Shown here: in pieces, positions 2,740-63,216 of the stretch
Layout: every line of letters starts with the position of its first letter
How positions within the stretch are numbered: the stretch's first letter is position 1
Assembly (NCBI GenBank): GCA_053919585.1
Contig: CM132822.1
Direction: 5' to 3' (one strand)
DNA length: 64,000 nt
DNA from: Euprymna scolopes
Taxonomy: Eukaryota
The notes under the pieces: model-generated
Seen by the model: the letters and a program-made list of their open reading frames with translations, nothing else
What the model was told of the DNA's origin: nothing
The model's database searches: none
Program-made: the position numbers and the translations under genes

Positions 2740-3181
2740 ACTATGAATGACTCCTCACTTGCAAACTGGTGGATAATTCGTCCAGAAATCCGAAATTTTC
2801 GTAAGAATCACTAAATAAAATGTACAGCTCTAGAAAAAACCGTTTTGGATTAGCGGTTTTTATTACCATGCAGGCGAAATAAAAAAAAAAAAAAAAAAAA
2901 CTTTCAAATATTTGACTTCCTCAACATGTTTGGTCATACAAGGAGATGCCTGCATAGAATACGAGTAAAAGGCTTTAAACTAGTTTTCTAGTAGACAACC
3001 ACTTTCAATAAGCTCCTGCTGAGATTATGAAAGAACGGTTCAACTGTCACGGTAAGCGCCCGATTTACTATATATCAGGATAGATGCGGAATACATTCCT
3101 ACAGTGTTTCCTGACGAAAAGCTGGCAAAATGCAAGAGAAACGTTTTAAATGAGAAACTGGTTCTCGTCACTATTGAATTC
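2740..3181 (-). pseudogene. Module X: degenerate fragment of an unidentified repeat-domain protein gene (representative of about 17 blocks)
   Basis: The minus-strand consensus across copies is nearly stop-free for about 100 codons: NSDENQFLIQNVSLAFSQLSIRKHCRNVFRIYPDIYIESVAYHDSLTFILSEFQQELIESGCLIEN..KVFYSYSMQ(T/A)(F/S)PCMSKHVEEVRSLNEFF (see ORFs 19327-19518, 32671-32871, 54142-54357, 56245-56463, 32397-32630). Other blocks lie near 5100, 15585, 19080, 25830, 29600, 32415, 38220, 40245, 42810, 44890, 53960, 56060, 56770, 57825, 59135, 60930 and 61975. Confidence 0.55.
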
Positions 3182-3182
3182 C

Positions 3183-3500
3183 AGATGGAGATGGACCAAT
3201 TAAAAGAGCTGTTTAGCAGATATTTGCAAGAAACAAGGCCATCTGTAAACTGGGATAAAATGAAACCAATTCCAGGAGATGTGATTAAATCCTATGCAGA
3301 CATTCAGCAACGAGTTCACAAACGACAAAGGCCTCAATTGGGTGTGGTGAAGCTTAATAGTGGCCTAGAAACAAGGATGGGTTGTCGCGGTGCCAAAAGT
3401 GCCATCTGTCCAGAAAGGATCTCACATTTCTTGATCTCATTGTCAAACAAATATATTTGAAGCATCCAGTTTGACCATTGGATGAGCTTTAGTACGGCCA
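3183..3500 (+). pseudogene. UGP2: UGP pseudogene fragment fused to module X
   Basis: In ORF 3104-3460 the first ~27 aa come from module X (+ frame) and the rest is MEMDQLKELFSRYLQETRPSVNWDK...KLNSGLETRMGCRGAKSAI. Confidence 0.85.
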
Positions 3501-3699
3501 AAAAGTCCTTTAAATATCTGAAATCCTCAACATGTTCAGACAGACAAGGTAATATGAAGGATAAAAAATGGATTGAAACATTGGAAAATAGAGATATTAA
3601 AACAGGTAGATCTAAAAAAATCTATAACAAATGGAAAACATCTGAAGGAAGATATGTAGGTGAATTTATAGTTTTCATTAGAAGAGTTCCAATGAAACT

Positions 3700-18636: not shown

Positions 18637-19565
18637 AAAGAGAAAACTTAATGATTATTCGAACCCATGCGAAACTTTATATTTGGGTATTAGCCAGAGG
18701 AAATCGGGACAGAAGGGTGAAAATTAAAAGAAATTTGCCAGGTGAAGGTCGAACGACAGCATTACAAATATGCATGTGTAGTGTAAAAATTATAGAAATG
18801 GGATTTTCCAAGTCGAGGGCGAACGACAGCATTACGAATATATATGTGTAACATAATAGCTATTGGTTCGCATTTTAATTTTTAGCCTTGTAGGAAACAT
18901 GTCTCCATAGCTCAAGTATAAACTTGAAGAGAAAAAGCTAAATGGAGGGAATTGCATTTATAACAAATGAAATATACAATAAATAAAATTGGCATAAATA
19001 GATTTACAATGTACCACAAAATTGTAAAATAATTTTCTTTGGTGAATTTAAAAAAAAAAATTAAAAAAATCAATCAAGGTTTTACACCATGAAAATGACT
19101 AATCACGTTTAAACTAGTGGATAATTCCTCTAAAAATCCGAAATCGTCATAGGAAGAATCACTAAAAGAATGCACAGTTCCAGGGGAAACATTTTTAATA
19201 TGATTGTCACTACCATGCAGGCGAAAACCTCAAAGATCAGACTTCAACATGTTTAGACAAAAAAGAATTGTCTGCATAGAATACAAGTAAAAGACTTTAC
19301 ACTAGTTTTCTATTAGACAAACACTTTCAATAAGCTCCTGAAATTCTCAAAGAATAAAGGTTAAAATAGGTCATGGTAAGTGACCGATTCCATATATCAA
19401 GATGGATGCGGAGTACATTCCTACAGCATTTCCTGAAGGAAAGCTGGCCAAATGCAAAAGAAACGTTTTGAAGGAACTGGTTCTCGTCACTATTAAATCC
19501 CAGATGGAGATGAACCAATTAAAGCAGTTTATGTTTTAATAAGCTCCTGCTGAAATTCTGAAAGG

Positions 19566-19597
<32 letters not shown>

Positions 19598-20259
19598 ATG
19601 TTAAGGCGCTGAGACAATATATAATCAGGATAGATGGAGAATACATGGAGAGCTGGCTAAATGCAAGAACAACGTTTTGAATAACAAACTGGTTCTCGTC
19701 ACTATTGAATTCCAGATGGAGATGGACCAATTAAAGCTGTTTTGCAGATAAAAGGTAAGAAACTGGGTCATCTGTAAAACAATAGAATCAAACAAATCCC
19801 AGCTGTGATTAAATCTCATGCAGACATTCAGCAAAGAGCTCAAAAACGTTAAAGACCTTCTCAATAAATTGGTCGTAGTGAAATTGAATTGTGGCCTACA
19901 ACCAAGTACGAGTTTTAGAAACGTTTTGAATAAGAAACTGGTTCTCGTCACTTCTGTTGGTGAAAAACTCGTTCAAAGATCTGAAATCTTCAACATGTGC
20001 AGACATGCAAGGAAACATGCGTAAAATAAAAGAATTTCTGCACTAGTTTTTAGAATAGCAGTCCATTAAACAACCACATTAAATAAGCTACCCCTTATTT
20101 TCTAAATCTGTAAAGGTTAAATAATGTTCTTAATAGAGACTTTAAATGTAAGGATGAACGTGAAATGTAGAATTTTGTTATCGATCAGTGGGGATACAAT
20201 AGGAAATCTATGAATTTATATTTATGCGTAAATTTTATGACTGGAATGCTTGTGAATTA

Positions 20260-22894: not shown

Positions 22895-23889
22895 AAGTCC
22901 TGTAAGAGTTTGGGTCTTATATGTTAGGCGACTACAAACCTGCAACATGTATGGAAAAAAAATAACTCAAATCGTGATACCCCATAATTTTTAAAATCAT
23001 TACACCTGTATATAACACGACAAAAAACAGCGCTAGAATCAAATTTCCATAAATAAATAACTTTCTCCCTAGACATGAAAAACTAAGGTTCTGAAAAAAA
23101 ATAAATAAATAAAAAATTTCATGGTCTTTTAAGTCAACAAATACAATGCGATACCTCGTCCAGTCGAGGGAGGGGGAAAAACTTACTAAAATGCATGGCT
23201 AGTTCTTTGTCGATCACACAGGGAATTGCAGCACCCAAAAACAAAATCTCAGATGCACCAAATTAGAGAGCAGTTTAGCAGATATTTGCAAGAAGCCATT
23301 CCATCTGTAAATGAGCATAAAATTAAACCAATCCCTGACAATGTGATTAAACCCTAGGCAGACATTCAGCAAATAGATTTCAAAAACGTTGAAGACCTCA
23401 ATAAATTGGTTGTGAAGCTGAATAGGAAAAAGTATGGGTTGTCGGGATAACAAAATTGTCATCTGTCTGGAATGATCTCACATTTCTTGATCTTACTTAC
23501 AAATTCAGTATCTGAGGATCAACTTTACCCATTGGATGAGATTTAGTACGGTCAATATAGTTGCATAAATATCGGAAGAGATTAGTAAAAATGTGAAGGA
23601 TAGAAACCATGTTTGAGTATTTTTTTTAAACATGTCTAAGCAATGATAAAAAGCAGGTGTACTTCAGGGGTCGATCATTGGTCCTTTATTCCTAATATTC
23701 ATAAAGGACCTCCTTGATAAAATAGTATCCGAGATAGGTATATTTGCTGACGACACCACACTATAACCGACACAAGGGAAACAAATGAACACTTATCCAA
23801 AGCAATGGCAGAAACCTTAGAGGAAGCTCTCCAGTCAGTAAAGGAATAGGGTAAAAAATAGATGGTAACTTCAGTGCTTCCAATTTCTT

Positions 23890-24900
23890 AATCAAGTTTA
23901 ACTATTTGATGAGATTTAGTACGGCCAAATAGTTGCATAAATATCGGAAGACACAAGTAAAAAAAGTGAAGGATAGAAACCATGTTTGAGTATTTTTTTT
24001 AAACTGTCCAAGCAATGATAATGCAGGTGCAGCTCCAGGGGTCGATCATTAGTTCTTTACTCCTAATAGTCATAAAGGACCTCCCTGATAATATAAATAG
24101 TCTGAGAGGTATATTTGCTGATGACACCACACTATAACCAGCACGAGGGAAACAAATGAACACACATCCAAGGCAATAGCAGACACCTTAGAGGAATACC
24201 TCCTGTCAGTAAGGGAACAGGTTAAAAAAAAAAAAAAACATGCTTCCAAGACTACTCGTTTTCTTTATTACAAGAAACCTCCTCAACCACCAATTGCTAT
24301 GGCTTAAGATACATTACTTGAAATTACTTCGTTCAAGCTCCACAGCTTAACTCTCCGAGAACATGACATGTAGCAGATACATTGCTAAGGCTGCTGCAAA
24401 GGTGGGTACCACCGTGGTAGAAAGTTACTCATGTCTGAAAGTATCCTGTACCTCTACAAGGCTCTCAGCAGCGTTAAAATTCACGCCAATCAGAATAATG
24501 TGCCGTCATCAATTAAACGTTTTATATCACTCCATGTTGATTTATTTTTTTTTTAGCAAAAAATTTAAAACTTCTAAAATTAACTAAAAACACTCGTCTT
24601 TATAAGAAGGACTTGTATTTATAAAATATTAAAGTAAATGAAATATAAAATTAAAAAATGTTATGTAAATTGATTGCATTGAATGTCAAGTTAAGATAGA
24701 TTTACAATGTACAACAAATTTGTAAAATAATTTTCTTTGAATTAAAAATCAATCTAGGTTTTAAACTATGAAACAAATTACTAATCACGTTCAAACTGGT
24801 GGATAATTCATCCACAAATCCGAAATAACCATAGGAAGAATCATTTTAAAAAATGCAGAGTTCCATCAAAAGACGTTTGATAAGTGGTTGTCATTATCAG
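23890..24900 (+). repeat. Segmental duplication of about 37335-38360; 24895-25560 is a tandem re-duplication of 24205-24850
   Basis: Long, nearly identical runs. ORF 24363-24587 is repeated within ORF 24938-25330. Confidence 0.88.
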
Positions 24901-26850: not shown

Positions 26851-26925
26851 TCTACAAATACGGAATCTATGAATTAATATTTAAGCATATATTTTACAAC
26901 CGGGCAACGTCGGGCGGCATACTAG
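26851..26925 (+). mobile_element. Helitron-like mini element or 3' terminus, best-preserved array copy (also ending at 30677, 33608 and 60225; decayed near 16830, 20250, 41372)
   Basis: tctacaaatacgg...ttttacaaccgggcaacgtcgggcggcataCTAG|t has a GC hairpin about 10 nt upstream of CTAG followed by T, the canonical Helitron 3' signature. Confidence 0.6.
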
Positions 26926-27180
26926 TTAATTATAGACTAACATGGTTTTCTGCTAGTCACTTATTTAAGACATTAGTATTCCAAGAATTCCTGGAGATCA
27001 GACCCTTCTTACAGGGCATACCTAAAATGCTTCTTACTATACATATAAGTCAAAACCATTCGATACCCTCTCCAGTCTGAAAATCAGACGAAAATGCACC
27101 ACTCCTGTACCCTTTGTCAACCATACAAGAAATTTCAAAAGTAGGTTGAAACCACAGCACCAAAAGACGAAACCTTAGAT

Positions 27181-27442: not shown

Positions 27443-27963
27443 TGATCTTTACTTTCTTGATCTTTACTTTCTTGATCTTTACTTTCTTGATCTTTACTTT
27501 CTTGATCTTTACTTTCTTGATCTTTACTTTCTTGATCTTTACTTTCTTGATCTTTACTTTCTTGATCTTTACTTTCTTGATCTTTACTTTCTTGATCTTT
27601 ACTTTCTTGATCTTTACTTTCTTGATCTTTACTTTCTTGATCTTTACTTTCTTGATCTTTACTTTCTTGATCTTTACTTTCTTGATCTTTACTTTCTTGA
27701 TCTTTACTTTCTTGATCTTTACTTTCTTGATCTTTACTTTCTTGATCTTTACTTTCTTGATCTTTACTTTCTTGATCTTTACTTTCTTGATCTTTACTTT
27801 CTTGATCTTTACTTTCTTGATCTTTACTTTCTTGATCTTTACTTTCTTGATCTTTACTTTCTTGATCTTTACTTTCTTGATCTTTACTTTCTTGATCTTT
27901 ACTTTCTTGATCTTTACTTTCTTGATCTTTACTTTCTTGATCTTTACTTTCTTGATCTTTACT
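27443..27963 (+). repeat. Perfect 15-bp minisatellite (tgatctttactttct) x ~34.7 inside a UGP copy
   Basis: 521 bp with no visible variant unit. The flanks are UGP GPRSAIWN and TVQQIE. Confidence 0.97.
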
Positions 27964-30900
27964 GTCCAACAAATTGAGTAGCTGAAGAGTCCAGTTTGAC
28001 TACGAGCTTTAGTACGGCCAAGGTTGTTGCACAATAGCCAAAGTATAAAAACAGTTAAGGATAGAAACCATTCTAAGGGCTTCACCTCACAGACCCACCG
28101 TTGCTTATGTGAACATTTTTACAATATGAACCCATAACATCAGACCCGTCAATATATTCATAGCAACCGAATCTTATGGCATTGAAAAAAAAAAATCACA
28201 AAACCCACTCCATTCCGATTTCTATAATGCCGACAAACTGACATTGCTGTTATGGAAATTTACCGTGATTTGATAGTATTTCAAAAAATTATAAAAGTAA
28301 CAACTACCATAGAGCTATAATATAACTCCCAAAACACCGAAAACTTATTCACTAATGCGCCAATACAAATTTTTTATACAGGGAATTTAAAAAATCGGTT
28401 GAAACAATAGCACCAAAGCAAAATAAATGTAGGTAGACCAATTTAAAGAGCCGTTTTGAAGATTTGTTAGAAACCTGGCCATCCCTAAATTGGGATTGAA
28501 TCAAACTAATCCCAGAGGAGATTAAATCCTATGCAGACATTCAGCAAAGAACGCTCAAAATCATGAAAGACCTCAATGAATTAGTCGGGAAGCTTAATAC
28601 TGGCCTAGTAACAAGTATGGGTTGTCAGGGTCCTAAAAGTGCCATCTGTCTGGAATGATCCCACATTCAATATTGCTGTCCAACAAATAGAGTATCTGAA
28701 GGATCTAACTTGACGAGCTTTACAATCAATAAAACAAACCTAACATACCAGATTGGTCAAAAATTCACACTAACAGTTGGTTTACATAAATATCAGACAA
28801 ATTTTATAATGGAATTAAATTTCTCATTTTCGTTGAAATTTAATTTAAATACGAAGAGAGCAATGGTTCAAAAACCAAAGTGAAAACGTTGGTTGAAACA
28901 GCAGCACTCGAAACCAAAAACAAAGAAAAGTCGATATCTACCACTTAATATAAAACGATAGACCAATTTAAAGAGTTGTTTAGCAGATATTTGCAATAAA
29001 TCAGGTCATCTGCAAGTTGGAATAAAATCAAATCAATCCCAGATGATTAAATCCTTTGCAGACATTCAGCAAATAATGCTCAAAATCATGAATGGCCTCA
29101 ATAAATTAGTTGAAGATAAAGGTGGCCTAGGAACACGTATGGGTTGTCAGGGTCCCAAAAGTGCCATGCGTCTGGAATGCTCACATTCCTTAATCTTACT
29201 TTCCAACAAATAAAGTATCTGAATGATCCAATTTTACCATTGGAGGAGCTTTAGAATCAATAAAACAAACCTATCATACCAGACACGTCAAAAATTCATA
29301 CTAACAAGAATGGAGGGTTTACATAAGTATCGGACAAAAATTTTATAATTCAATTAAATTTTCATTTAATTTTAATTTACCTACGAAGTGTCTAAGAGAG
29401 CAATGGTTCAAAACCAATTTTCTATTTAATAATTAGAGGGAAGATAAAAGACGTTATCGGCGGGGGAGTATTCATATTGTTATAACCGCAGGTAACTATA
29501 ATATTAAAATTAAAGATTTCATCAATATAAATTGCAGGTTTACAATGTACTACAAAATTCAAAAATAATTTTTGTATTATTTAGAATTTGTCTAGTTTTG
29601 CGCTATGAAAAATCGACTTGTCACTTCCAAACTCTTGGATACTTCATACGAAAGTACAAAATTGCCACTATTGGAAGAATCATTTTCAGATAAGCGGTGT
29701 CATTACCGTGCGGGAAAAAAATCCCAAAGATCCAACTTCTAAACATTAGATATGCAAGAAAATGACTTTACACTAGTTTTCTATTAGGCAACCAGTTTCA
29801 ATAAGCTACTGCTGAAATTCTGAAAGAATTGAACTATCATAGTAAGCGACCGATTCAATATATATTGGGATAGATACGGAATACATTCCTACAGCGTTTC
29901 CTGACTGAAAGATTGCTAAATGCAGACCATAGATCTGAAATCCACAACAGGTTTGCATAAAATTAAAAGCATTAGACGACCATTTTAAATAAGCTACCAC
30001 CTGGTTTTCCAAATATGTAAAGGTGAAATAATGCTCTGAATACAGACTTAAACATTGGACGTAGAATGCATCCCTGATCAATCATTTCTATAATAAATAC
30101 AAAATCTGAGATAATATTCAAGCGTATATTTCACAACTTATTCAAAACGCTTCGTAAGGATTATTTGATAATTCTGACAAACTATTTTTTGTCCGAGAAA
30201 CTGGTTCTCGTCACTACTGAATTCCATATGGATGGACCAATAAAACCGGGTCATCTGTAAAATGGAATAAAATAGAAAAAAAAACCCAGATGCGATTAAA
30301 TCCTATGCAGACATTCAGCAAAGAGCTCAAAATACGTCAAGACCTCAATAAATTGGTTGTGAAGCCAACTTAAAGATGGCTAAATGCAAAAGATCCGAAA
30401 TCCTCAACGTGTGCAGACATAAGGAAATATTTGCAGAAAATAAAAGGATGTTTCCACTAGTTACTAGAATACCAGACCATTAGACAACCATTTTAAATAA
30501 GCTACCACCTGGTTTTCTAAATGTGCAAAGGTGAAATACTGTTCTGATTACAGACTTCATGATTGGATGTGGAATGCATCACTAATAATCAATAAAGAAT
30601 TATTTCCATAAATAAGAAATCTGAGATGATATTCAAGCGAATATTTTACAACTGGATAACTTTGGCCGGCATGCTAGTAAATTATAGACTAAAAAAATTG
30701 TTTGAATCATCAAATAAACGTAACGAACCCAGCTAATCGTTATATTAAACGGATATGGTTTTCTACAGATCACTATAATTTAAATGATAGAATAATTATC
30801 TTTCAAAAATTCCTGAGATAGGACCTTTCATACAACGCGTATCTAAAAGGCTTACTATTCATCTATTGATGTCTCGATTTGTCTCCCCTAATAAAGAAAA

Positions 30901-33304
30901 TGCAAATCAATCATGAACTTCGCGTTCGAATCTAAATTCTACCAATGCTATAATCAATCCCCCAATATATACATAACTGCCACGCTAGACACTGAAGACT
31001 TAGTCATTAACGTTCTGATAAAGACCATAAAAATAATTCTTGAGTCTACAAACAATGCAATAACCAGTCTGGTCAGAAAAACCGATGAAAATGCACAATT
31101 CCAGTTCCCTTAGTTGAATATACTGTTCAAACATTTGACTATTGGTTAGCTTTTATACGACCAAGATAGCATAAATACCTAAAGTATAAAAACAAGGTAA
31201 AAATGAATTTATTACTATACATATTGATATCTGTCGCCTTTAAAAAAAAAGGCCAAAGCAATCAGGAATTTCTAGTTTGAATCTTAAAACTTTGTATCTT
31301 TATCATATCCTCATCCACAAAAACATCATAGAAACCCAATAATAAACGTAACCGCATGGATAGATATGTGCATCCATGTTGTAAAATGCTGGTAGTGGTT
31401 TTTAAAATTTATAAAAAGTTCCTTGCCGTCTTTACTCCAAAATTCCATTAAACAGTAAAATTAAAAAAAATTTTGAATGAAGCAGAACCCACCATGAATG
31501 GAATTTTGAGCTGAAATTTGACATGCGTCATATCCGCATTTTACAAAACAATCATAGAAGCAAAGTAATTAAAGAGAAAACATCCCTTACAGCGCACAGT
31601 ATAAAGTAAAAATTTAAGACGTTTAGAAAATACGTTCTATATAACTCCACGTTGATTTTATTAAAGATGACTTGCTTTTAGTTTATTTTAGACGTTCGGT
31701 TTTTGAATAAGTCCATATGAAGCAGAACCAATCATGAATTTTACGTTTGAATAAAATCTACTAGAGCTATCACGCTATAATCAATCTCTTCAAATACAGA
31801 ACTGTCTCTCTGGACATCGGAAACTTAATCACTAATTTCTGATAATTATTTTTATGGTCTTATTTAGTCTACAAAACTATGCGATACTTCCTCTAGTCAG
31901 AACCCAACACCTCGAAAACTTGTTAAAATACACCACTCAAGTTCGCTGTGTCCACGATAAAGGAAATTGCAAAAGTTGGTTGAAACAGTAGCACCCAAAT
32001 ATAAAAATGTCAGATGAAGATGGACCAATTTGAAGAGCTATTTAGCAGATATTTGTAAGCAACTGGGCCACATGTAAATTTGGATGAAATCAAACCAATA
32101 CCAAAGGTTGTGATTAAACCACATATAGGCATTTGGCAAAGATCTCAAAAATGGGAAAGAGCTGAATAAATTGGTTGTGAGGCTGAATGGTGGCCTCGGA
32201 ACAAGTATGGGATCGGGGTCCCAAAAGTGCCATCCGTCTTGAATGATCTCTAAAAATCCGAAATAGTCATAGAAAGAAAGTTCCTTTTTTTGAATAAGTC
32301 CATATTATAAAAAGGAGGGGACTATATAAAATGAAATATACAAGGAGTAAAAGTAATTGTCAATACCACAAAATTGTAAAATAATTTCGTTTGATGTTAA
32401 AAAAAAAACAGTCTAGGTTTTACACCATGAAAATTACTAATCGCGTTCAAACTGGTAGATAATTCCTTCAAAAATCCGAAATCGTCATAGGAAGAATCAA
32501 TAAATGAATGCAGAGTTCCAGGAAAACCCGTTTTGGATAAGTGCTTGTCAATACCATGCGGGTGAATACCGAAAGATCTGACTTCCTCAACATGTTTAGT
32601 CATACAAAGAAATGGCTGCAAAGAAAACAAGTAAAAGACTTTACACTAGTTTTATAGCAGACAACCACCTTCAATAAGTTCCTGTGGAAATTCTGAAAGT
32701 TGAAAAGGTCACACTGTCTTGGTAAGCAACCGATTCAATATATATATCAGGATAGATGCGGAATATATTCCTACAGCTTTTCCTGATGGAAAGATGCCTA
32801 AATGTAACGGAAACGTTTTGAATAAGAAACTGGTTCCCCTCACTATTAAATCCCAGATAGAGATGGGCCAATTAAAGCTGTTTAGTTGATATTTTAATCT
32901 GCTGAAAATCTGGAAGTTTAAGCCGTCATGGTAAGACGCTGATTCAATATACCTCAGCATAGATGCAGAATACATTTCCTAGAGCGCTTCCTGATTGAAG
33001 TCTGGAAAATGTGAAAGAAACGTTTTTAAGAAACTGGTTCTCGTCATTATTGAATTCCAGATGGAGATGGACCAATTAAAAAAGCTGTTGTGCAGATATT
33101 TGCAAGAAACTGGGTCATCTGTAAAATGGAATAAAAATCAAACAAATCCCAGCTGTGATTAAATCTCATCCAGACATTCAGCAAAGAGCTCAAAAACGTT
33201 AAAGACCTTCTCAATAAATTGATTGTGGTGAAATAGAATTGTAGCCTACGAACACATACGGGTTTTGGAAACGTTTTGTATAAGAAACTGGTTCTTGTCA
33301 CTAT

Positions 33305-33530
33305 GCTGGTGAAGAACTCCAAAGATCTGAAATCTTTAACATGTGCAGACATACAAGGACATTTGTGCATAAAATAAAATTCTTTTACATACTCTTAGAA
33401 TAGCACTCCATTACACCATCACTAAATAAGCTACCCCCGATTTTCTAGATGTGTAAAGGTTAAACAAAATGTCCTGATTATAGACTTTAAATATAAGGAT
33501 GGACGTGAAATGTATCCCCCACTAATCTAA
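33305..33530 (-). pseudogene. Module X': diverged second repeat unit of the module X gene
   Basis: gctggtgaagaactc..aaagatctgaaatc..aacatgtgcagacatacaagg..aataagctacc is homologous to X but distinct (FMQTFPCMSAHVEDFRSLNEFF versus SMQTFPCMSKHVEEVRSLNEFF). Further copies lie near 16560, 19955, 26630, 29930, 30390, 41075 and 59930. Confidence 0.5.
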
Positions 33531-34067
33531 AGAATTTCTATAATACGAAATCTGAATTCATATTTACATGTAAATTTTACAACTAGGCAGCGTTGAGTCG
33601 CATGCTAGTAAATTATAAGCAAATATGTAGTCGTAATTATCAAATAGCCCTTACGAAACCAGATAAGCATTATATTAAACGGATGTTTTTTTTGCATATC
33701 ACTTCAATTTAAATAATATCTTCCAAGAATTTCTTGAGATCTGCTCCTTCATACAGAGAATACCGGAAGTGCTTTTTACTACACATTGATGACATCTTTA
33801 TTTTTCTATAAAAAAAAAAAGTTTTCAATGAACATAAACCAATCATGAAAGTCACCTTTGAATCTTAAATCTATCAAAACTATCAAGCTATAATAAAACA
33901 CCTCAAAAACATAACTGTCTCCATGGCCAGCGAAAACCTAGTCACGTTCCGATAACATTTTTACGGTCTTTTTGAGACCGTTAACAATGCAATGCCCTCT
34001 CCCGTCAAAACCCAAAATCTCGAAAAACTTATCAAAATGCCACTCCAGTTCCTTTGTGGACCATACA

Positions 34068-39575: not shown

Positions 39576-41779
39576 ATAAATCATTTGTCAAAAACTTAGT
39601 CACGTTCTGATAAAGACAATCAAAATTCTTTTGGCCAAGAACAATGCAATAACCCCCCCCCCGGCCAGAAAAACTTCTGCAAATGCACCATTCCAGTTTC
39701 CTTTGTTGAATATATTGTTCAACGAACACAGTATCAAATTTGACCACTGGATTAGCTTTTATGCGATCAAGGTAATAACAAATATCCAAAGTGTAAAAAA
39801 AAATTTTTTAAAGTGTAAAAAGTTTTACTGGTGATATGTCCCCTTAAACATACACTAAAACGCAAAAGCAGTCAGGAATTTCACGTTTGAATCTTAAAAA
39901 GTATCTTTATCATATCCTCATCCACAAAAACAACCATCATAGAAACCCAATAATAAACGTAACCGCATAGATGGATACATGTATCAATGTTGTAAAAAAC
40001 TACCAGCATTTTTACATTTGTAAAAATTCCTGTCTTTTTACTCTAAAATTCCATTAAACAGTCAAATTAAAAAAGGAAATCTTGAATGAAGCAAAACCCA
40101 CCCCACCATGAATTAGGTATTTTAAGCTGAAATTTTATTAAATTGTTTTTAAATACAGATATGACGCATGTAAAAAAACAAAAAAAAACAATCATAGAAG
40201 CCAAGTAATTAAAGCGAAAACATCAATTACAACAATTAATCTAAGTTTTACACCATGAAAATTACTAATCACGTTCAAAATAGTTAATGATTCCTAAAAA
40301 TCTGAAGTCGTCATAGAAAGAATCACTTAATGAATGCAGAGTTCCAGGAAAAAGAAACTCCTTCCAAGATCTTACTTCCTCTCATGTTTAGACATACAAG
40401 GAAATGTCTGCATAGAATAAGCGTAAAAGAGTTAAATTTCTATTAGACAAGCACTTTCAATAAGCACCAGCTGAAATTCTGAAAAAAATAAAGGTTGAAC
40501 TGTAAGCGACCGATTCAATATCTCAAGAGATGCAGAGTGCATTCCTACATCATTTCCTGAGGGAAAGCTGGCCAAACGCAAAAGAAACGTTTTTAATAAG
40601 AAACTGGTTCTAGTTACTATTAAATCCCAGATGGAGATGGACTAATTAAAGCTGTTCAGTAGATATTGTAATGAGTCTACTGAAATTCTGAAAGTGTAAA
40701 CTGTCATGGTAAGCAACTGATTCAATATATATCAGGATAGATGTGGAATACATTCCTACAGCGTTTCCTGACGGAAGATGCCTAAATGCAAAAGAAACGT
40801 TTTAAAAGAAACTGGTTCTCGTCAGTATTGAATTCCGGATGAAGATGGACCAATTAAAAGCTGTTTAGCAGATATTTGGAAGAAACCGGGGCATCTGTAA
40901 AATGGAAGAAAGTCAAAACAAATGCCGGATGTAATTAAATCCTATGCAGACATTCAAAGAGATTTCAAAAACGTCAAAGACTTCAATAAATTGGTTGTGA
41001 AGTTGAATTGTGACGTACGAACTAGTATCGGTTTTGGAAACGTTTTGAATAAGAAACTGATTCTCGTCACGATCATGCTGGTGAAGAACTCCTTCAAAAG
41101 ATCTGAAAACATGTGCAGACATACAAGGAAAGGTTTGCATATAAAAGATTCTTTCACTTGTTCTTAGAATAACACTTCATTAGGCAACCATTTTAAATAA
41201 GTTACCCCTGATTTTTGAAATGTGCAAAGGTTGAATAATGTCCTAAATACAGACTTTAGGAGCATGGACGGTAAACGTATCCCTAATAATAATCTATCAA
41301 ATTTCTATAATATCTATGAATTAATATTTATACGTAAATTTTACACATGCGCAGTGTTGGGTGGTATACCAGTAAATTATAACCTAATAATACGTGGTCG
41401 TAATTATCAAATAAATCTTACGCAACAAGATAAGCGTTATATAAAACGGATACGATTTTCTGCATATGACTTCAATTTAAATGATTGAAAGTATTAATCT
41501 TCCAAGAATTCCTGAAGATCGGACCCTTACTACAGCGCATACCTAAAGTGCTTCTTAATATATAAATGACGTCTTGATTTGTCTCCATAAAAAAAGACCT
41601 TCAATGAAGCATAACCAATCATGAATTTTACGTTTGAATAAAATCTACCAGAGCTATCCATCTCTAGTCAATCTCTTCAAATACATAACTGCCTCCCTGG
41701 ACATCGAAAACCTTGTCACTAACTTTCTGATAATTATTTTTACGGTCTTTTTTTAGTCTACAAAAACTATGCGATACTT

Positions 41780-47975: not shown

Positions 47976-50900
47976 TTATATTTTTGAGTATATTTTAGTT
48001 TCTTTCAGAAAATTGATAATTTTTTGGGGATCAATCTTGTTTAATATTGTTTTCAGATTTTTTTCTTGGTAATACTTTGTTCGGATTTGTTCAAGGTCAA
48101 TGCAGTTTGTCAGTATATGGTGTATTGTGTAGGGTTCTTGACACGTTATACAGTTTGGTGTCTCCTCCCCTTTTAGTAGATGTGAGTGGGTGATGTGAGT
48201 GTGACCTATTCGCAGTCTGGTCATTACTACCTCTTCCTTTCTTGTTAACTTTTTGGTGTTTCTCGTTCCAATATTTGGTGTTATTTGGAATAGTTTGTTT
48301 TTGGTGCATGAGCTCCAGTTTTCTTGCCATTTTCTCTTCAAAAATGTGTTTATTTTAGTCTTTAGGTCTGTATAGGGGATTTTTCCACTTATGTGGTTTT
48401 GTTGCAGAGTTTCCTTTGCTGCCTTATCTGCTTGTTCATTCATGTATATGCCGATATGGCTTGGTATCCAGCAAAAGATAATGTTTTTTTTCATGGTTAT
48501 GGCATCTATTTTGTTTAGCAATTTTGTAATAAGTGGGTTTGTCATTTTTTTTTCTTTTAGAGATATGAGTATTGAAAGTGAGTCAGTAAATATGATATAT
48601 TTTTGATGGTCATCATTGGTTATTATATTCAGTGCCGAATCTATGGCTGTTGCTTCTGCGCTGAAAATAGAAGATTCGTTTGGGAGCCTTTTCTTTAGTT
48701 TTATTTTTTTGTGGATGGCTGCGCATCCTACTTTATCTCCATCTTTTGATCCGTCAGTGTAAATTTGTGTATATTCTTTGTATGTATTCTGGATGATAAG
48801 TAGTTCTTCATGGAAGGTTGATGGGTGGGTTTTCGTTTTGGGATATTTATTTAATTTTAATATTATGTGTGGTTGTTTGATCATCCAGGGTGGAGTTTTT
48901 GATTTGTTATATTTATGTATTTTTGTAATGTCCATTTGGGCTTCTGTGAGAAGGTTTTTTATCCGGAGGCTGTAGGGCTTGATGATATTTTCTTTCTTGT
49001 TGAAGAGATGTGTGTATTGTGGGTGGAGGGTACATTGGTATGCAGGATTTGTTGGACACGATACCAGCTTTAGGTAATATTGTAGCGCTAACTTCTGTCG
49101 TCTTAGAATCAGTGGAGGCTCATGGGCCTCTATATAGAGGCTTTCTACTGGAGAGGTTCTAAATGCTCCCAAGGCTAATCTTAATCCTTGATGATGGATT
49201 GTATTTAGTTCTTTTATGTAGGACTTCCTTGCTGCTCCATAGATGAAGCATCCATAGTCCATTTTAGATCTGATTAGGGTTTGGTATAATTTCAATAATG
49301 TGACTTTGTCTGCACCCCAATCGGTGTGTGCTAGGACTTTGATCAATTGCATTGTCTTTTGGCATTTTGCTTTTAAATATTTTATATGCGGTATAAAGTT
49401 CAATTTTTTATCGAATATAATACCTAAATATTTATGTTGGTCGGTGAGTGGGATGTTCTTGTTATCCAGTTTCAGGTTGGGGTCGTGGTGGAATTTTCGT
49501 AATTTGCAAAAGTGGATGCATTTAGTTTTTTCCTCTGAGAATGTAAATCCATTTTCTATGGCCCATTTGTTTATTTTATTCAGACAGAGTTGTAGTTTGC
49601 GTTCGGCTGTTTGTATATATTTAGATTGGTAGTATATAAGTAGGTCGTCCACGTATAGGGCGTTTTCAATTCCTGGGTCTATGTTTTTTATGATATTGTT
49701 TATTTTAATGTTGAAGAGGGTGACAGACAGGATACTGCCTTGGGGGACCCCCATTTCTTGATCTTTTTGGACTGAATAAGTGTTGTCCATCCGTACTTGG
49801 AAGTTTCTATTTGTTAAGAAATTTCTGATAATTTCTGGCATTCTACCCCTAAGTCCTAGTTCATACAGGTCTTTTTGGATTCCGTATTTCCAAGCGGTGT
49901 CATACGCCTTTTGCATGTCAAAAAAAATTGCTATTAGATGTTCTTTTTTTGCAAATGCTTCTCTTATGCGTGTTTCCAGTTTTATTAAGTGATCGGTGGG
50001 GCTTCTATTTTTCCTGAAACCCGACTGGCTTTCTGTAATTAGATTTTTGCTTTCCAAGTACCAATTTAACCTTTCGTTAATCATTCTCTCAAAAGTTTTG
50101 CACAAACAACTAGTTAGTGCAATGGGTCGGTAGTTTGTTGGGTTTGTATGGTCTTTTTTTGGTTTGGGTATTGGGATTACTGTTGCCTGCTTCCAGTTTT
50201 TTGGAATGTTGTTAGTTATCCATATCTCATTGTAAATTTGTAATAAGTAGTCCAGTGATGGTTTTGGTAGTTTTTTGAGGAATTGATAATGGATCTCGTC
50301 GGGGCCGACTGCTGTATCGGGAGATTTGTTTATTGCCTCCTCTAGTTCTGCACTGTTGAATAATTGATTGTAGTTTTCTTCATTTTTTGATTTGAAGTTT
50401 ATTTTTATTTTTTCTTCATTTTTCTTTATAGCTTGGAATTTTTTATTTTGGTTTTTTGATGATGAGTTCATTGAGAATTGTTCTGCTAATTTATTTGCGA
50501 TATTTTGTTTGTCGGTAATCTTTGTGTTGTCGCATATAAGGTGTTTAATAGGGTTCTTTGTATTTTTTCCTGCTATTTTTCTGACCATCTCCCATACTTT
50601 TTTGGGTTTTGTGTTTTGATTAATTTTTGTTACATAGTCTTTCCACGAGTTCCGTTTTGATTCTTTGATAGTTTTCCGTGCTTTGGCTTTGCTGTTTTTA
50701 TAGGTGTCCAAATTTTCTTTCGTTGGACTGTTTTTGAATTTCCTTAGGTTTGCACGTCTGGCTCTTATAGCTTCTTTGCATTCTTTATTGTACCAGGGTT
50801 TGTTATATTTTGTAGTAGTGGAACTTTTTGGTATGTTCTCCTCGGCTATTGTGAGTAGGGTGTTGCTGAAATATGTGATGTGTTCTAAGTCAGGATTCGC

Positions 50901-51647
50901 TTCAGGTATTAATCTGTATTGACATGTATTTTGGAAATTTTCCCAATTTGCCTTTTGTAAATTCCAGCGGGGTGTTTTGTCTTCTGGCTTGGGATTCTCG
51001 TTTTCTATTATGATTGGGAAGTGGTCACTTCCGCATGTATCCTTATGTGTTCTCCAGCTATAATCCATGTATATAGTTGGGTCACATAGTGTTATATCGA
51101 TTGCTGATAGGGTTCCCGTTGGTGGGTGCATATATGTATTCTCTTTGTTGTTGAGTAGGCATAGATCATTTTGGTTAATTATTTTTTCTATGGTTTGGCC
51201 TCTTTTGTTGTTTTTTTTACTGCCCCACCATATATTGTGACTATTGAAGTCTCCCAACAGTAGAAAAGGTTTAGGTAGTTGTTTGATTATATTGTTTAAT
51301 TCTGTTTCGTTTATTGTTTCATTTGGTGGTATATAGAGTGAGCATAGGGTTACTGTTTTGTGTAGTGTTGCAGTTATTGCAACAGCTTGCATATTTGTTT
51401 TTAAGTTCACTTTGCTGTGTGGAATGTTTTCGTTTATCAGTATTGATGATCCACCGGTGGCTTTGCATGATAATTTGTTTATGTGGTTGTATATTGAGTA
51501 GTGTTTTATGTTAATTTTGTCATTTTCTTTTAAGTGTGTTTCCTGTAGGCAAATTATTGCAGGACATAAGGATTTGATAAGTATTTGCATTTCTTCGATA
51601 TTAATTTTTAATCCTCTTATGTTCCACTGTAGGATTTTGTTAGTCAT
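47976..51647 (-). CDS. LINE ORF2: apurinic-like endonuclease, reverse transcriptase, RNase H and C-terminal CCHC (1223 aa)
   Basis: APE motifs QWNIRGL, CLQET, LLGDFNSH and GSDHFPI. RT motifs YRPIALTS, FFDMQKAYD, GVPQGSILS and LYVDD. RNase H motifs IYTDGS, SAEATAI, FTDSLS and WIPSHIGIYMNEQAD. Terminal CITC..TIHHILTNC. Confidence 0.96.
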   Translation of the reverse strand: MTNKILQWNIRGLKINIEEMQILIKSLCPAIICLQETHLKENDKINIKHYSIYNHINKLSCKATGGSSILINENIPHSKVNLKTNMQAVAITATLHKTVTLCSLYIPPNETINETELNNIIKQLPKPFLLLGDFNSHNIWWGSKKNNKRGQTIEKIINQNDLCLLNNKENTYMHPPTGTLSAIDITLCDPTIYMDYSWRTHKDTCGSDHFPIIIENENPKPEDKTPRWNLQKANWENFQNTCQYRLIPEANPDLEHITYFSNTLLTIAEENIPKSSTTTKYNKPWYNKECKEAIRARRANLRKFKNSPTKENLDTYKNSKAKARKTIKESKRNSWKDYVTKINQNTKPKKVWEMVRKIAGKNTKNPIKHLICDNTKITDKQNIANKLAEQFSMNSSSKNQNKKFQAIKKNEEKIKINFKSKNEENYNQLFNSAELEEAINKSPDTAVGPDEIHYQFLKKLPKPSLDYLLQIYNEIWITNNIPKNWKQATVIPIPKPKKDHTNPTNYRPIALTSCLCKTFERMINERLNWYLESKNLITESQSGFRKNRSPTDHLIKLETRIREAFAKKEHLIAIFFDMQKAYDTAWKYGIQKDLYELGLRGRMPEIIRNFLTNRNFQVRMDNTYSVQKDQEMGVPQGSILSVTLFNIKINNIIKNIDPGIENALYVDDLLIYYQSKYIQTAERKLQLCLNKINKWAIENGFTFSEEKTKCIHFCKLRKFHHDPNLKLDNKNIPLTDQHKYLGIIFDKKLNFIPHIKYLKAKCQKTMQLIKVLAHTDWGADKVTLLKLYQTLIRSKMDYGCFIYGAARKSYIKELNTIHHQGLRLALGAFRTSPVESLYIEAHEPPLILRRQKLALQYYLKLVSCPTNPAYQCTLHPQYTHLFNKKENIIKPYSLRIKNLLTEAQMDITKIHKYNKSKTPPWMIKQPHIILKLNKYPKTKTHPSTFHEELLIIQNTYKEYTQIYTDGSKDGDKVGCAAIHKKIKLKKRLPNESSIFSAEATAIDSALNIITNDDHQKYIIFTDSLSILISLKEKKMTNPLITKLLNKIDAITMKKNIIFCWIPSHIGIYMNEQADKAAKETLQQNHISGKIPYTDLKTKINTFLKRKWQENWSSCTKNKLFQITPNIGTRNTKKLTRKEEVVMTRLRIGHTHITHSHLLKGEETPNCITCQEPYTIHHILTNCIDLEQIRTKYYQEKNLKTILNKIDPQKIINFLKETKIYSKI

Positions 51648-59090: not shown

Positions 59091-62000
59091 TTGGAAGCCA
59101 AGTAATTAAAGCGAAAACAATTACAATTAATCTAAGTTTTACACCATGAAAATTACTAATCACGTTCAAAGTAGTTAATGATTCCTAAAAATCTGAATCT
59201 TCATAGAAAGAATCGCTTAATGAATGCAGAATTCCAGGAACAGGAAACTCCAAGATCTGACTTCAACATGAGTAAAAGACTTGACTAAATTTCTATTAGA
59301 CAAACACTTTCAATAAGCATCGCTGAAATTCTGAACAAATGGTCAAACTGTAATAGTAAGCGACCGATTCAATATCACGAGATTCAGAGTGCATAACTAC
59401 AGCATTTCCTGAAGGAAAGCTGGCCAAACCCAAAAGAAACGTTTTGAATAAGAAACTGGTTCTCGTCACTATTAAATCCCAGATAGAGATGGACCAATTA
59501 ACGCTGTTCAGCAGATATTTTAATGAGTTTCTGCTGAAATTCTGAAAGAAACTGTCATGGTAAGCAACAGATTCAATATATATCAGGATAGATACGTATA
59601 CATTCCTACAGCGTTTCCTGGCAGAAAGATGCCTAAATGCAAAAGAAACGTTTGGAATGAGAAATTGGTTCTAGTCAGTATTGAATTGCGGATGAAGATT
59701 AACCAATTAAAAGCTGTTTAGCAGATATTTGCAAGAAACCGGGCCATCTGTAAAATGGAATAAAATCAAAACAACTGCCAGATGCGATTAAAACTTATCC
59801 AGACATTCAGCAAGAGATTTCAAAAACGTCAAAGAACTCAAATTGGTTGCAGTAAAGTTGAATTGTGGCCTACGAAGGAGTACAGGTTTTGGAAACGTTT
59901 TGAAACAGAAACCGATTCTCGCCAATATTATGCTGGTGAAGAACTCCTTCAAAAGATCTGAAATCCTCAACATGTGCAGACATACAAGGAAACGTTTGCA
60001 TCAAAAAGAATTTTTCACTCGTTCTTAGAATAGCACTTCATTAAACAACCATTTTAAATAAGTTACACCCGATTTTCTAAAGGGGTAAAGGTTTAATAAT
60101 ATCCTGACTATGAGCATGTATGTGAAATGTATCACTAATTTATTAAAATTTTCTATAATATGAAATATATGAATTAATATTTATTCGTAAATTTTACACC
60201 TGGGCAGCGTTGGGTGGCATGCTAGTAAATTATAACCAAATACGTAGTCGTGATTATCAAATAAACCTTACGCAACAAGATAAGCATGACAAACAGATAT
60301 GGTTTTCTGCATATAACTTCAATTTAAATGATTAAAAATATTAATCTACGAAGAATTCCTAAGCGCATACCTAAAGGGCTTCTTACAATACATATATTAA
60401 TGTCTTGATTTGTCTCAAAAAAAAAAAAAAAAAAAACAACAACTTCAATAATGCAGAACCAATGAAATTTTACGTTTGAATCAAATCTACCAGAGCTATC
60501 CAGCTATAATCAATCTCTTCAAATACGTACCTGCCTCCATGGACATCGAAAACCTAGTCACTAGCTTTATTATTTTTACGGTCTTTTTTAGTCTACAAAA
60601 CTATGCAATACTTCTAGTCAGAAACCAACTCCTCGAAAAAATTGTTAAAATGCACCACTCAAGTTTGCTGTGTCCACGATACAGGAAATTGCAAAAGTTG
60701 GTTGATTAAATAAAAAAAATGTCAGATGAAGATGGACCAATTTAAAGAGCTGTTTAGCAGATATTTGCTAGAAACTGGGCCACCTGTAAATTTGGATAAA
60801 TCAAACCAATACCAAAGGATGTGATTAAACCACATGAAGACTTAAATTGGTTGTGAAGCTGAATGGTGACCTAGGAACAAGTATGGGATGTCGGGGTCCC
60901 AAAAGTGCCATCAGTCTTGAATGATCTATTAAATCCGAAAACGTCATAGGAAGAATCACTAAATGAATGCAGAGTTCCAGGAAAACACGTTTTGGATAAG
61001 TAGTTGTCAATACCATGCGTGTTAATACCCAAAGATCTGACTTCAACATGTTTAGTCATACAAAGAAATGACTGCATAGAATACAAGTAACAGACTTTAC
61101 ACTTTCTAGTAGACAACCACTTTCAATAAGTTCCCAAGTTGAAAAGGTCAAACTGTCTTGGTAAGCAACTGATTCAATATATATCAGGATAGATGCGGAA
61201 TATATTCCTACAGCGTTTCCTTAAGGAAAGCTGGCTAAATGCAACGAAAACGTTTTTAATAAGAAACTGGTTCTCGTTACTATTAAATCCCAGATGGAGA
61301 TGCACCAATTAAAGCTGTTTAGTAGATATTTTAAGCTCCTGCTTCAATTCAGGAAGTTTAAACTCCTGGTAAGACGCAGATTCGATATATATCAGGATAG
61401 ATGGAGAATACATTCCTAGATTTTCCTGAGAGAATGCTTGCTAAATGTATAAGAAACTGGTTCCCGTCATTATTGAATTCCAGATGGAGATGGACTAATT
61501 AAAAATGCTCTTGCAGATATTTGCAAGAAACTGGGCCATCTGTAAAACGGAATAAAATCATAAAAAGGTGTGATTAAATCCTAATGTGACATTTAGCAAA
61601 AATCTCAAATACGTCAGAGACCTCAAATTGGGTGTCTGCAAGCTGAATGGTGGCTTAGGAATAAATGTGGATGTCGGGGTCCCAAAAAGTGCCATCCGCC
61701 TTGAAATATCTCATTTCTTGATCTCACCGTCCAATAAATTGAGTATTTGAAGAGTCCAGATTGACCATTCAGCTTTAGTATGGCCAAGATTGCATAAATA
61801 CTCAAAGTGATACGAGTATAACACCGATAATTGAGATTTAAAAAATATTTTAGTATCCACATTACAAGTGGATTGTCTTAATATGGATCATTAAAATGTA
61901 CAATGAATCAAAGAAATTGTCAATGTGAATTGATTGCAGATTTATATTGTACTAAATTCGAGAATAATTTTATACCATGAAAATTACTAATCACTTTCGA

Positions 62001-63216
62001 ACTGATTGATAATTGATCCAAAAATCCGAAATTTTCATCGTAGAATTACTAAAATGTAGAGTTCCAGGAAAAGACAGGTTTTGGATTAATGGTTGTCATT
62101 ACCATGCAGGCGAAAAACTAAAAGATCTGACTTCAGCAACATGTTTAGACATTCACGGAACTGTGTGCATAGACACAAAGTAAAAATAAAAACTATACAA
62201 ATAGACAAACACTCAATAAATTGCAAAAATTCAATTCATATCAGGATGCAGAATACATTCCTACATTGTTGACGTAAAGCTGGCTAAATGCAATGGACAC
62301 GTTTTGAATATAAAATTGGCTCTCGTCACTATTAAGTTTCAGATGGAGATGGACCAATTAAAGCTGTTTAGCAGATATTTCATAAGCTCCTGCTGATATT
62401 CCGAAAGTTTAAACTCAATGTAAGCCACAGATTCAATTATATCAGGATAGATGGAGAATACTTTCCTACAGTATTACCTGAGGGAAAGCTGGCTAAATGC
62501 AAGAGAAACGAAAACCTTATTAAAATGTACCCCTGTAGTTCCCGCTGTCGATTCTAGGGAATTGCAGAAGTTGATTAAGAGAGCAGGACCTGAAAACCAG
62601 AAAAAATGTCAGATGGAGAGTGACCCATTTTAAGACTTGTTTAGCAGATATTTGCAAGAAACCAGGCCATCTGTAAATTGGGATAAAAGTAAACCTATTC
62701 CAGGAGATGCAGTTTAATCACATACAGACATTCAGCATGGTGCTTAAAAACGTGATAGACCGCAATAAATTGGTTGCGGTCTAAGCCAAATAGTGGCCTA
62801 GTAACAAGTATGGGTTGTTGGAGTTCCCAAAATGCCAGAATGATCTCACGTTTCTTGATCTTACTGTCCAACGAATCGAGTATCTGAAGGATTCAGTTTG
62901 ACCATTGGATGAGCTTTAGTATGGCCAGGATTGTTGCATAAATATGCAAAGTGATGCAAGTATGAAAACAAATCAAGGATAGAAACAGTTTTGAGAGGCA
63001 TACCTCTGACCACCGATGCTTATTACACTAAACAAAACCGACAAGCGCCAGATACGTCAATATTTTCATAGCAATCGACTATTATGACATTGAAAATTAA
63101 ATCTTGAAACTCCTCCATATTTTGCATTCAGAGTGCTTTTGTCCTATTATGCTGTTTGTATCGGGTTTTAGAGCAAAGATCGGGTGTGATGTGAATTCCC
63201 AAACCAGTTTCCATTC

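What the first reader, a model, noticed from the sequence alone, without database searches (positions are those of the whole stretch)
33017..33304. Probable founding event: a UGP piece inserted into gene X with a ~37-bp flanking duplication
Seen: gaaacgtttt(gaa)taagaaactggttctcgtcactat occurs on both sides of a ~215-bp UGP segment (MEMDQ...TS.G) at 33017-33050 and 33268-33304. The same arrangement is at 19671/19918, 40795/41037 and 59645/59892. Removing the UGP piece and one duplicate joins X directly to X' and restores the repeat-protein periodicity. Inference: a templated insertion placed UGP homology inside X. Recombination between this short piece and longer UGP copies could then generate the X-to-long-UGP chimeras (e.g. 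3100-3500) and drive expansion.
Basis: partly seen in the sequence, partly recalled or inferred. Interest (0 to 1): 0.75.

Follow-up and report, generated by a model that had tools for sequence, protein, structure and literature searches.

The report
Reshuffled UGP pseudogene array, not founder
The 37-base repeat flanking a UDP-glucose pyrophosphorylase (UGP) fragment is real, but it is one old rearrangement, copied six times, inside a 92-kb array of dead spliced UGP fragments in a large animal genome, and it is probably a late by-product of array shuffling, not the event that started the array.

Summary
Observation confirmed. The 37-mer (S2) sits at 33017-33050 and 33268-33304 around UGP exon 2 plus exon 3 bases 1-109. 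The same layout occurs at the three other window loci and at two more just outside. A third S2 lies 204 bp upstream, and S2 belongs to a 124-bp module (S1+S2) repeated about 60 times in one 92-kb, same-strand cluster.

The UGP pieces are spliced copies of a multi-exon gene on contig C9, and they share derived bases, so they have one origin. All six triplets break at exon-3 base 109, so they are one event that was later duplicated.

Copies that still carry exon 1 must be the ancestral form. The X-linked copies are a derived clade (97/94). The start of X' probably derives from UGP exon 4. If so, long copies (e3-e4-X') keep the native order and S2|X' is derived.

The only uninterrupted S1-S2-X' copy nests inside the triplet clade, so it is a revertant and not an empty site. 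Excising the insert restores no consistent reading frame, and X has no relative elsewhere in the genome or in protein space.

"Founding event" is not supported. Polarity remains about 70:30.

A Helitron-like 3' end recurs in the units. The finding is ordinary and of low interest.

The parts
32721..32846 (+). Unit A: module S1+S2. The third, upstream copy of the 37-mer is at 32810-32846.
   Evidence: blastn and nhmmer with the S1S2 module
32849..32894 (+). Unit A: first ~46 bases of UGP exon 2, then a jump back to S1 (junction J2)
   Evidence: the A/B doublet is also seen in the self-match 32716-32894 vs 32925-33101
32930..33050 (+). Unit B: module S1+S2. The left-hand 37-mer of the finding is at 33017-33050.
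33053..33155 (+). UGP exon 2 copy, 79% identical to the C9 gene. It starts within 0-9 bases of the parental exon 1/2 boundary.
33158..33264 (+). UGP exon 3 bases 1-109, joined to exon 2 without the 17.5-kb parental intron. It contains stop codons (pseudogene).
33267..33304 (+). Right-hand 37-mer (copy C of S2), joined to exon 3 base 109 through 2-3 filler bases
33305..33480 (+). X' (alpha family). Its first ~40 bases probably derive from UGP exon 4 bases 35-72.
33542..33617 (+). Helitron-like 3' end (…CTAG followed by T) that recurs about 300 bp after X'alpha
19375..20135 (+). Paralogous triplet (A, B with e2-e3 1-109, S2-X')
40502..41249 (+). Paralogous triplet
59356..60110 (+). Paralogous triplet
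3051..3566 (+). Long type II unit: S1 S2, e2, full e3, start of e4, then X'.

Best explanation
The window lies in a 92-kb, single-orientation array (G000:C40:64.599-64.692 Mb) of pseudogenised 5' fragments of a UDP-glucose pyrophosphorylase mRNA. Exons 1 to 4 of the multi-exon gene on contig C9 are joined without introns. These fragments are interleaved with array-specific modules (S1, the 37-mer S2, and X') and with a Helitron-like 3' end.

The array grew by segmental duplication and was reshuffled by unequal recombination, deletions and short templated patches. That left about nine recurrent junction types.

The flagged arrangement [S1 S2][e2 e3(1-109)][S2 X'] is one such junction (exon 3 base 109 joined to S2). 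It arose once and was then copied six times. It is most likely derived from a longer unit [S1 S2 e2 e3 e4...X']. In that unit the stretch from exon 3 base 110 to about exon 4 base 34 was either lost by a deletion reaching the S2 of the next unit or replaced by a copy of S2.

Shown:
- the structure and its copy number;
- the spliced C9 origin of the UGP pieces;
- the single origin of the triplet junction;
- recombination between units;
- the revertant status of the UGP-free copy.

Inferred:
- the polarity (long form first);
- the exon 4 origin of X';
- the exact repair mechanism.
For: All matches to X, X' and the UGP piece fall within C40:64599172-64691750, on the + strand.

The C9 gene has exons 1-13. 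The array copies join e2|e3 exactly across a 17.5-kb intron, and many also carry e1|e2. The copies are 65-88% identical to the C9 exons but only about 55% to the intronless C10 paralogues. Two derived columns are shared by 30 of 31 copies.

All six triplets stop at exon 3 base 109 and form one clade (85/72). That clade is sister to eight long type II copies (98/96) inside a starred clade (97/94). The exon-1-bearing copies and the long unit at 3177 branch outside this clade. The 3177 unit nevertheless carries 13 of the 16 states diagnostic for type II.

An HMM of S2+X' hits the exon 4 equivalent ('PLVLMNSFN') of both C10 genes on the sense strand at 9.7 and 8.9 bits; 0 of 150 shuffles reach that score. 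The four best hits of an exon 4 HMM in 124 kb are the X' starts of triplets (3 of 60 permuted nulls reach it). tblastn gives the same alignment. In long copies X' follows e3 and the start of e4 colinearly.

The UGP-free copy (L029:3476-3750) is 92% identical to a triplet's X' and groups with four triplets. In the upstream tree this grouping is starred 100/98, and monophyly of the six triplets is rejected at AU p = 0.00017.

Independent deletion variants exist: e3(71)|X'(17) at 30.3 kb and S2(107)|X'(74) at 80.5 kb.
Against: The triplet clade and the main long clade are sisters, so the tree alone does not give polarity. The base of the tree is a polytomy rooted on a distant outgroup.

The position of the long unit at 3177 may reflect gene conversion by its neighbour at 1723; the two group at 96/94 in the 3' tree.

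S2*-X'beta adjacency is old (about 68% identity; the alpha/beta split has 100/98 support). S2|X' may therefore predate the triplets, and it may even be the older state.

The link from X' to exon 4 rests on about 40 bases at P of roughly 0.01-0.05, and the matching copies are paralogues, not independent observations.

The inferred ancestral sequences of the left and right 37-mers are indistinguishable. This fits a duplication made at the time of insertion as well as it fits two neighbouring units.

It remains unexplained why S2 abuts exon 2 within 0-9 bases of an exon boundary.
Confidence: 0.6

Rival explanations
1. An array-specific sequence X (S1-S2-X') was contiguous. A templated insertion placed UGP e2-e3(1-109) after S2 and duplicated the 37-mer. 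Later recombination or gap-repair conversion with long UGP copies produced the long X-UGP units.
For: S2|X' adjacency exists in a UGP-free copy and in the old beta family. The inferred ancestral left and right 37-mers are the same sequence. The upstream region of the main long clade nests with triplets 19k and 33k, and units do recombine. The 3' tree weakly moves two long copies next to exon-1-bearing neighbours (82/77).
Against: Exon-1-bearing copies must predate any X-linked copy, because their e1|e2 junction is a splice junction. X-linked copies are a derived clade. The UGP-free copy is nested within the triplets. X' probably derives from exon 4 and is colinear with e3-e4 in long copies, which makes the long form native. 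A long type II unit (3177) lies outside the triplet+long clade. S2 is a module repeated about 60 times, not a site-specific duplication.
Confidence: 0.25
2. Everything called X (S1, S2, X') is an older, heavily decayed generation of the same UGP cDNA (end of exon 3 plus exon 4, or exon 1). On this view the '37-mer duplication' is UGP sequence in two generations of copies.
For: tblastn aligns S2+X' in frame and at conserved length with exon 4 ('LNKKLILVTIMLVKNSF' against 'LNKTYETNVPLVLMNSF'; E = 0.97). X' shows HMM support for exon 4. S2 sits exactly where exon 1 would end.
Against: HMMs of S1+S2 find nothing in 130 kb of the C9 locus, in the C10 genes, or in the exon-1 regions of array copies. 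A consensus-to-consensus Smith-Waterman score equals the shuffle mean (z = 0). The middle 27 bases of S2 match exon 4 at only 26%.
Confidence: 0.1
3. The units are non-autonomous Helitrons that captured a retro-copied UGP 5' fragment. Rolling-circle replication that ran through the 3' end made the head-to-tail array, and template switching during capture made the junctions, including the 37-mer repeat.
For: A ~80-base end …CGGGCAACGTCGGGCGGCATGCTAG followed by T recurs about 300 bp after X'alpha in about 10 units. The first-pass screen found at least 241 candidate sites genome-wide (40 scored; 33 of those lie on other contigs), and all 10 fetched copies end in CTAG followed by T. Published work reports Helitron tandem arrays, a bias of capture toward 5' exons in the Helitron's orientation, and LINE-made retrocopies inside Helitrons (PMC12001565).
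Against: No Helitron 5' end or Rep/helicase gene was found. The stem before CTAG folds no better than shuffles. UGP, S1, S2 and X' occur nowhere outside this one cluster, so there is no sign of transposition. Helitrons make no target duplications. Unequal crossing-over alone explains a same-strand array.
Confidence: 0.2

Closest known systems
Tandemly amplified processed-pseudogene (retrocopy) fragments reshaped by unequal crossing-over
   Same: Intron-less exon junctions copied from one parent gene. Stop codons and frameshifts. All copies in one orientation at one locus. Higher-order repeats at 72-95% identity. Discordant trees along the unit.
   Different: Only the 5' part of the mRNA (exons 1-4) is present, with no poly(A) tail and no recognisable target duplication. 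It is therefore not a canonical 3'-anchored LINE-made retrocopy. It is also interleaved with array-specific modules of unknown origin.
Helitron gene-fragment capture and Helitron tandem arrays (as summarised in PMC12001565)
   Same: A 3' end …CTAG followed by T that is shared with a dispersed family. The captured piece is the 5' end of a gene, in the same orientation as the element. The arrangement is tandem. Retro-copied mRNA inside Helitrons has been reported.
   Different: No 5' terminus, no Rep/helicase gene and no transposed copy of the cargo were found. The cargo is confined to one locus.
Target-site duplication flanking an insertion
   Same: A direct repeat of 34-37 bases on both sides of a foreign piece, and a copy that looks like the empty site.
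   Different: The repeat is part of a module present about 60 times, with a third copy 205 bp upstream. The 'empty site' is phylogenetically nested among filled sites. The right flank (X') probably derives from the same gene as the 'insert'.
Templated patches and microhomology-mediated template switching (FoSTeS/MMBIR-type repair) in repeat arrays
   Same: A non-homologous junction with 2-3 filler bases, and a short nearby sequence copied into the break.
   Different: The mechanism is inferred from structure alone. A plain deletion between neighbouring units gives the same product.

Membership tests
Processed pseudogene / retrocopy of UGP | Exon-exon junctions of the parent gene with the introns absent | tested here: met
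   The e2|e3 junction is exact across a 17.5-kb C9 intron. e1|e2 and e3|e4-start junctions are present in many copies.
Processed pseudogene / retrocopy of UGP | 3' end of the mRNA with a poly(A) tail, flanked by target-site duplications | tested here: not met
   Fragments end in exon 4. No later exon appears in tblastn or Pfam scans of the cluster, and no poly(A) was seen after the fragments.
Processed pseudogene / retrocopy of UGP | Loss of coding capacity | tested here: met
   Stops and frameshifts occur in nearly all copies. The longest UGP-containing frame is 118 aa.
   The 37-mer is the end of a 124-bp module with about 60 copies, and a third copy lies 205 bp upstream at each locus.
   The only alpha-type S1-S2-X' copy groups inside the triplets (92% identity to T_74k; starred 100/98 in the upstream tree). 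An old beta-type S2*-X' adjacency does exist.
   S1 and S2 show no UGP homology. The start of X' matches UGP exon 4 at P of roughly 0.01-0.05.
Gene X as a protein-coding repeat gene | A conserved open frame, or homologues in protein or family databases | tested here: not met
   After in-silico excision the open spans are 38-160 codons, in different frames and strands from copy to copy. No Pfam family at a meaningful score (one match at E = 0.042, 14.3 bits against a cut-off of 25). Atlas best score 0.83, recognition 810. The single HMMER hit is a summed weak match to a satellite-like protein.
Helitron | 3' end CTRR, with the host base T following, shared by dispersed copies | tested here: met
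Helitron | A stable hairpin 10-12 bases before the 3' end | tested here: inconclusive
   The DNA fold of 26885-26930 gives -1.6 kcal/mol (z = +1.3). That of 33575-33620 gives -5.5 kcal/mol (z = -1.4).
Helitron | 5' TC terminus and (for autonomous copies) a Rep/helicase gene | not tested
   Dispersed copies were fetched only around their 3' ends. No 5' end was sought.

The most novel reading that the evidence does not exclude
The array is the cargo of a Helitron-like element. A retro-copied 5' fragment of UGP was captured, and the whole unit was amplified in place by rolling-circle read-through. The same-strand array is now transcribed as a small-RNA (piRNA-like) source against the UGP paralogues. 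The recurrent 37-mer junctions would then mark template switches of the replication machinery.
Probability: 0.08. Interest if true: 0.55.

Novelty: new member of a known kind. Interest (0 to 1): 0.22.

Why it matters
It matters mainly as a worked example. A repeat flanking a gene fragment looks like a target-site duplication when read by eye. In a tandem array, a deletion or a templated patch between neighbouring units gives the same picture, and an apparent "empty site" can be a revertant.

The locus is a clean case of a spliced 5' gene fragment amplified dozens of times at one place next to a Helitron-like end. That could be useful for studying how such arrays grow in large mollusc-type genomes. 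Nothing here points to a new function or mechanism.

Tried and rejected
1. S1+S2 as decayed UGP exon 1, exon 3 or exon 4. By eye I found several tempting alignments. HMM searches against 130 kb of the C9 locus, against the exon-1 regions of array copies and against the C10 genes gave nothing. The consensus Smith-Waterman score had z = 0. Rejected as unsupported.

2. A parent for X elsewhere in the genome. DNA searches found matches only inside the cluster, and nothing in the 60 kb upstream of the C9 gene.

3. ORFs of 107-158 aa exist, but they overlap the antisense strand of UGP exons 2-3 and have no Pfam or Atlas relatives.

4. A plus-strand X-X' peptide (63 aa from the UGP-free copy) searched against 1.84 billion proteins. 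The one hit, P0001, is a 52-aa-repeat protein. Each repeat matches at only 26.9 bits with 11 of 33 identities. Treated as spurious.

5. Using the left and right 37-mers to tell a duplication from neighbouring units. Both inferred ancestral sequences equal the general S2 consensus, so the comparison is uninformative.

6. A longer downstream tree (520 bp) to place the UGP-free copy. It was unresolved: alignment breaks down beyond about 200 bp, and AU p = 0.10.

7. The exon 3b-4a tree for recombination. It was poorly resolved.

8. The PF01704 hits on contig C5. They do not resemble UGP by tblastn and were set aside.

Method note: the C9 exons were never joined into a spliced model. They were searched and aligned exon by exon. 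The naturally intron-less C10 genes served as the contiguous outgroup.

Full report
**Setting.** The window is G000:C40:64604001-64668000 of a 5.9-Gb, 925-contig assembly. It is AT-rich (about 35% G+C) and carries an intact LINE (endonuclease, reverse transcriptase and an RNase-H-like domain), so it is a eukaryote. Earlier notes of this scan suggest a cephalopod or other mollusc; I did not test that.

**Observation.** The two 37-mers are at 33017-33050 and 33268-33304. A 24-base core matches 25 times in the window at up to 3 mismatches, always on the + strand, against 0 in shuffles. Between them lie UGP exon 2 (33053-33155) and exon 3 bases 1-109 (33158-33264). The same layout is at 19.7, 40.8 and 59.7 kb, and twice more just outside the window. 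Two facts were missed. A third 37-mer lies about 205 bp upstream at every locus. And the 37-mer (S2) is the end of a 124-bp module (S1+S2) with about 60 copies.

**Where the UGP pieces come from.** PF01704 finds a multi-exon UGP gene on C9, two intact intron-less copies on C10 (509 and 500 aa), and the C40 fragments. The C40 pieces join exon 2 to exon 3 exactly across a 17.5-kb C9 intron. Many copies also carry the last ~50 bases of exon 1 spliced to exon 2, and a few bases of exon 4 after exon 3. They are 65-88% identical to the C9 exons and only about 55% to C10. Two derived columns are shared by 30 of 31 copies. So a single mRNA-derived fragment of the C9 lineage seeded the whole array. Every match to the UGP piece, to X and to X' lies within C40:64599172-64691750.

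**Grammar of the array.** I distinguish four kinds of unit.
- Type I carries exon 1, exon 2 and exon 3. It continues either into the start of exon 4 and X'alpha, or stops at exon 3 base 150 and continues into an S1b-like piece, S2* and X'beta.
- Long type II is [A: S1 S2 e2(1-49)][B: S1 S2 e2 e3 e4-start … X'alpha].
- The triplets are [A][B: S1 S2 e2 e3(1-109)][S2 X'alpha].
- One UGP-free copy, [A][S1 S2 X'], sits at the 3' edge (L029:3244-3750).

Other one-off junctions exist: e3(71)|X'(17) at 30.3 kb, S2(107)|X'(74) at 80.5 kb, and S1(93) joined to the exon-1 region in three hybrids.

**One event, not four.** All six triplets break at exon 3 base 109 with the same 2-3 filler bases. They form one clade in the e2-e3a tree (85/72).

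**Polarity.** In that tree, rooted on the C10 genes, the triplets are sister to eight long type II copies (98/96) within a starred clade (97/94). Exon-1-bearing copies and the long unit at 3177 branch outside it. The e1|e2 junction is a splice junction, so exon-1-bearing copies are the ancestral state whatever the root. UGP homology was therefore in the array before any S2|e2 junction, and "founding" fails for the family as a whole.

The next question is which X-linked form came first. The long unit at 3177 carries 13 of 16 type-II-diagnostic bases yet lies outside the triplet+long clade. That favours a long ancestor, although conversion by its neighbour at 1723 is possible.

A second argument comes from X'. 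A tblastn search with the exon 4 peptide has its best window hit on S2+X' of the 41-kb triplet. An HMM of S2+X' hits the exon 4 equivalent of both C10 genes, on the sense strand, at 9.7 and 8.9 bits; 0 of 150 shuffles reach that. The four best hits of an exon 4 HMM in 124 kb are triplet X' starts (3 of 60 permuted nulls reach it). In long copies X' follows exon 3 and the start of exon 4 at the right spacing. If X' is the rest of exon 4, the long order is native cDNA order, and S2|X' is derived wherever it occurs. I put about 70% on the triplet being derived.

**The "empty site".** But its X' is 92% identical to triplet 74k and groups with triplets 41k, 59k, 66k and 74k. Its upstream region groups with the same four (starred 100/98), while triplets 19k and 33k group with long copies, and monophyly of the six triplets is rejected there (AU p = 0.00017). 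So the UGP-free copy is most simply a triplet that lost the UGP piece and one 37-mer by recombination between the two 37-mers. The diverged S2*-X'beta family (about 68% identical; alpha/beta split 100/98) shows that S2|X' adjacency is old.

**Is X a gene?** Excising the insert in silico leaves open spans of 38-160 codons, in different frames and strands from copy to copy. Minus-strand ORFs overlap the antisense strand of UGP exons 2-3 and have no Pfam or Atlas relatives. The plus-strand X-X' peptide found only a satellite-like repeat protein through summed weak matches. S1, S2 and X' occur nowhere else in the genome. I could not show that S1 or S2 derive from UGP. Why S2 meets exon 2 within 0-9 bases of an exon boundary remains unexplained.

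**Mechanism of the triplet.** Two routes give the observed product. One is a deletion from exon 3 base 110 to the S2 of the next S1-S2-X' unit. The other is a repair event that copied S2 from about 250 bp upstream into a break. The inferred ancestral left and right 37-mers are both the general S2 consensus, so they do not discriminate.

**Context.** A ~80-base end …CTAG followed by T recurs about 300 bp after X'alpha in about 10 units. It is shared with a dispersed family: the first-pass screen gave at least 241 candidates, and all 10 fetched copies end in CTAG followed by T. Helitron tandem arrays, capture biased to 5' exons, and retro-copied mRNA inside Helitrons are on record (PMC12001565). 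A Helitron-like vehicle is therefore plausible, but the cargo never left this locus and no 5' end was found.

**Verdict.** The locus is a new member of a known kind, a rearranged and tandemly amplified retro-fragment array. Interest is low.

Noticed in passing
window 26856-26934, 30610-30686, 33542-33617, 41312-41381, 60157-60234; loci L031-L040: A ~80-base element end …TTTTACAACCGGGCAACGTCGGGCGGCATGCTAG followed by T recurs after X'alpha in the array. It is shared with a dispersed family (at least 241 first-pass candidates, 40 scored). All 10 fetched copies end in CTAG followed by T, as Helitron 3' ends do. No 5' end was sought.
   Followed up: partly
window 27443-27963: A perfect 15-base minisatellite (TGATCTTTACTTTCT, 34.7 copies, 100% identical) has grown inside a UGP exon 3 copy, from the 'DLTFLDLT' stretch. 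Such perfection points to very recent expansion or to an assembly effect.
   Followed up: no
window 47976-53106 (- strand): An apparently intact LINE: ORF1 of 488 aa and ORF2 of 1223 aa with endonuclease, reverse transcriptase and an RNase-H-like domain. It is inserted in the array in the opposite orientation.
   Followed up: partly
L001:1393-2922 (-), L002:1393-2895 (-) = G000:C10 at 100.98 Mb and 111.85 Mb: Two intact intron-less UGP genes (509 and 500 aa), about 11 Mb apart. One of them (the 509-aa copy) is only 61-63% identical in DNA to exons 2-3 of the multi-exon C9 gene. They look like old retrogenes that stayed open.
   Followed up: partly
window 58316-58775, 62420-62880; window-equivalent 69008-69468: Three near-identical hybrid units in which S1 (to base 93, inside the first 6 bases of the 37-mer) is joined to the exon-1 region of a type I copy. 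This is another recurrent junction of the array.
   Followed up: partly
L029:3410-3484 (window-equivalent about 87.41-87.48 kb): A (TA)n microsatellite replaces the 5' part of S1 in the UGP-free terminal unit. It helps create a spurious 100-aa open frame.
   Followed up: no
window 23518-24229: A 371-base tandem repeat, 1.9 copies at 86% identity. It lies in the spacer that follows the UGP exon-3 remnant at 23346-23496.
   Followed up: no
G000:C5:20730132-20737669: PF01704 (UDPGP) hits that tblastn with the UGP protein does not recover. This is probably a different member of the UDPGP family.
   Followed up: no
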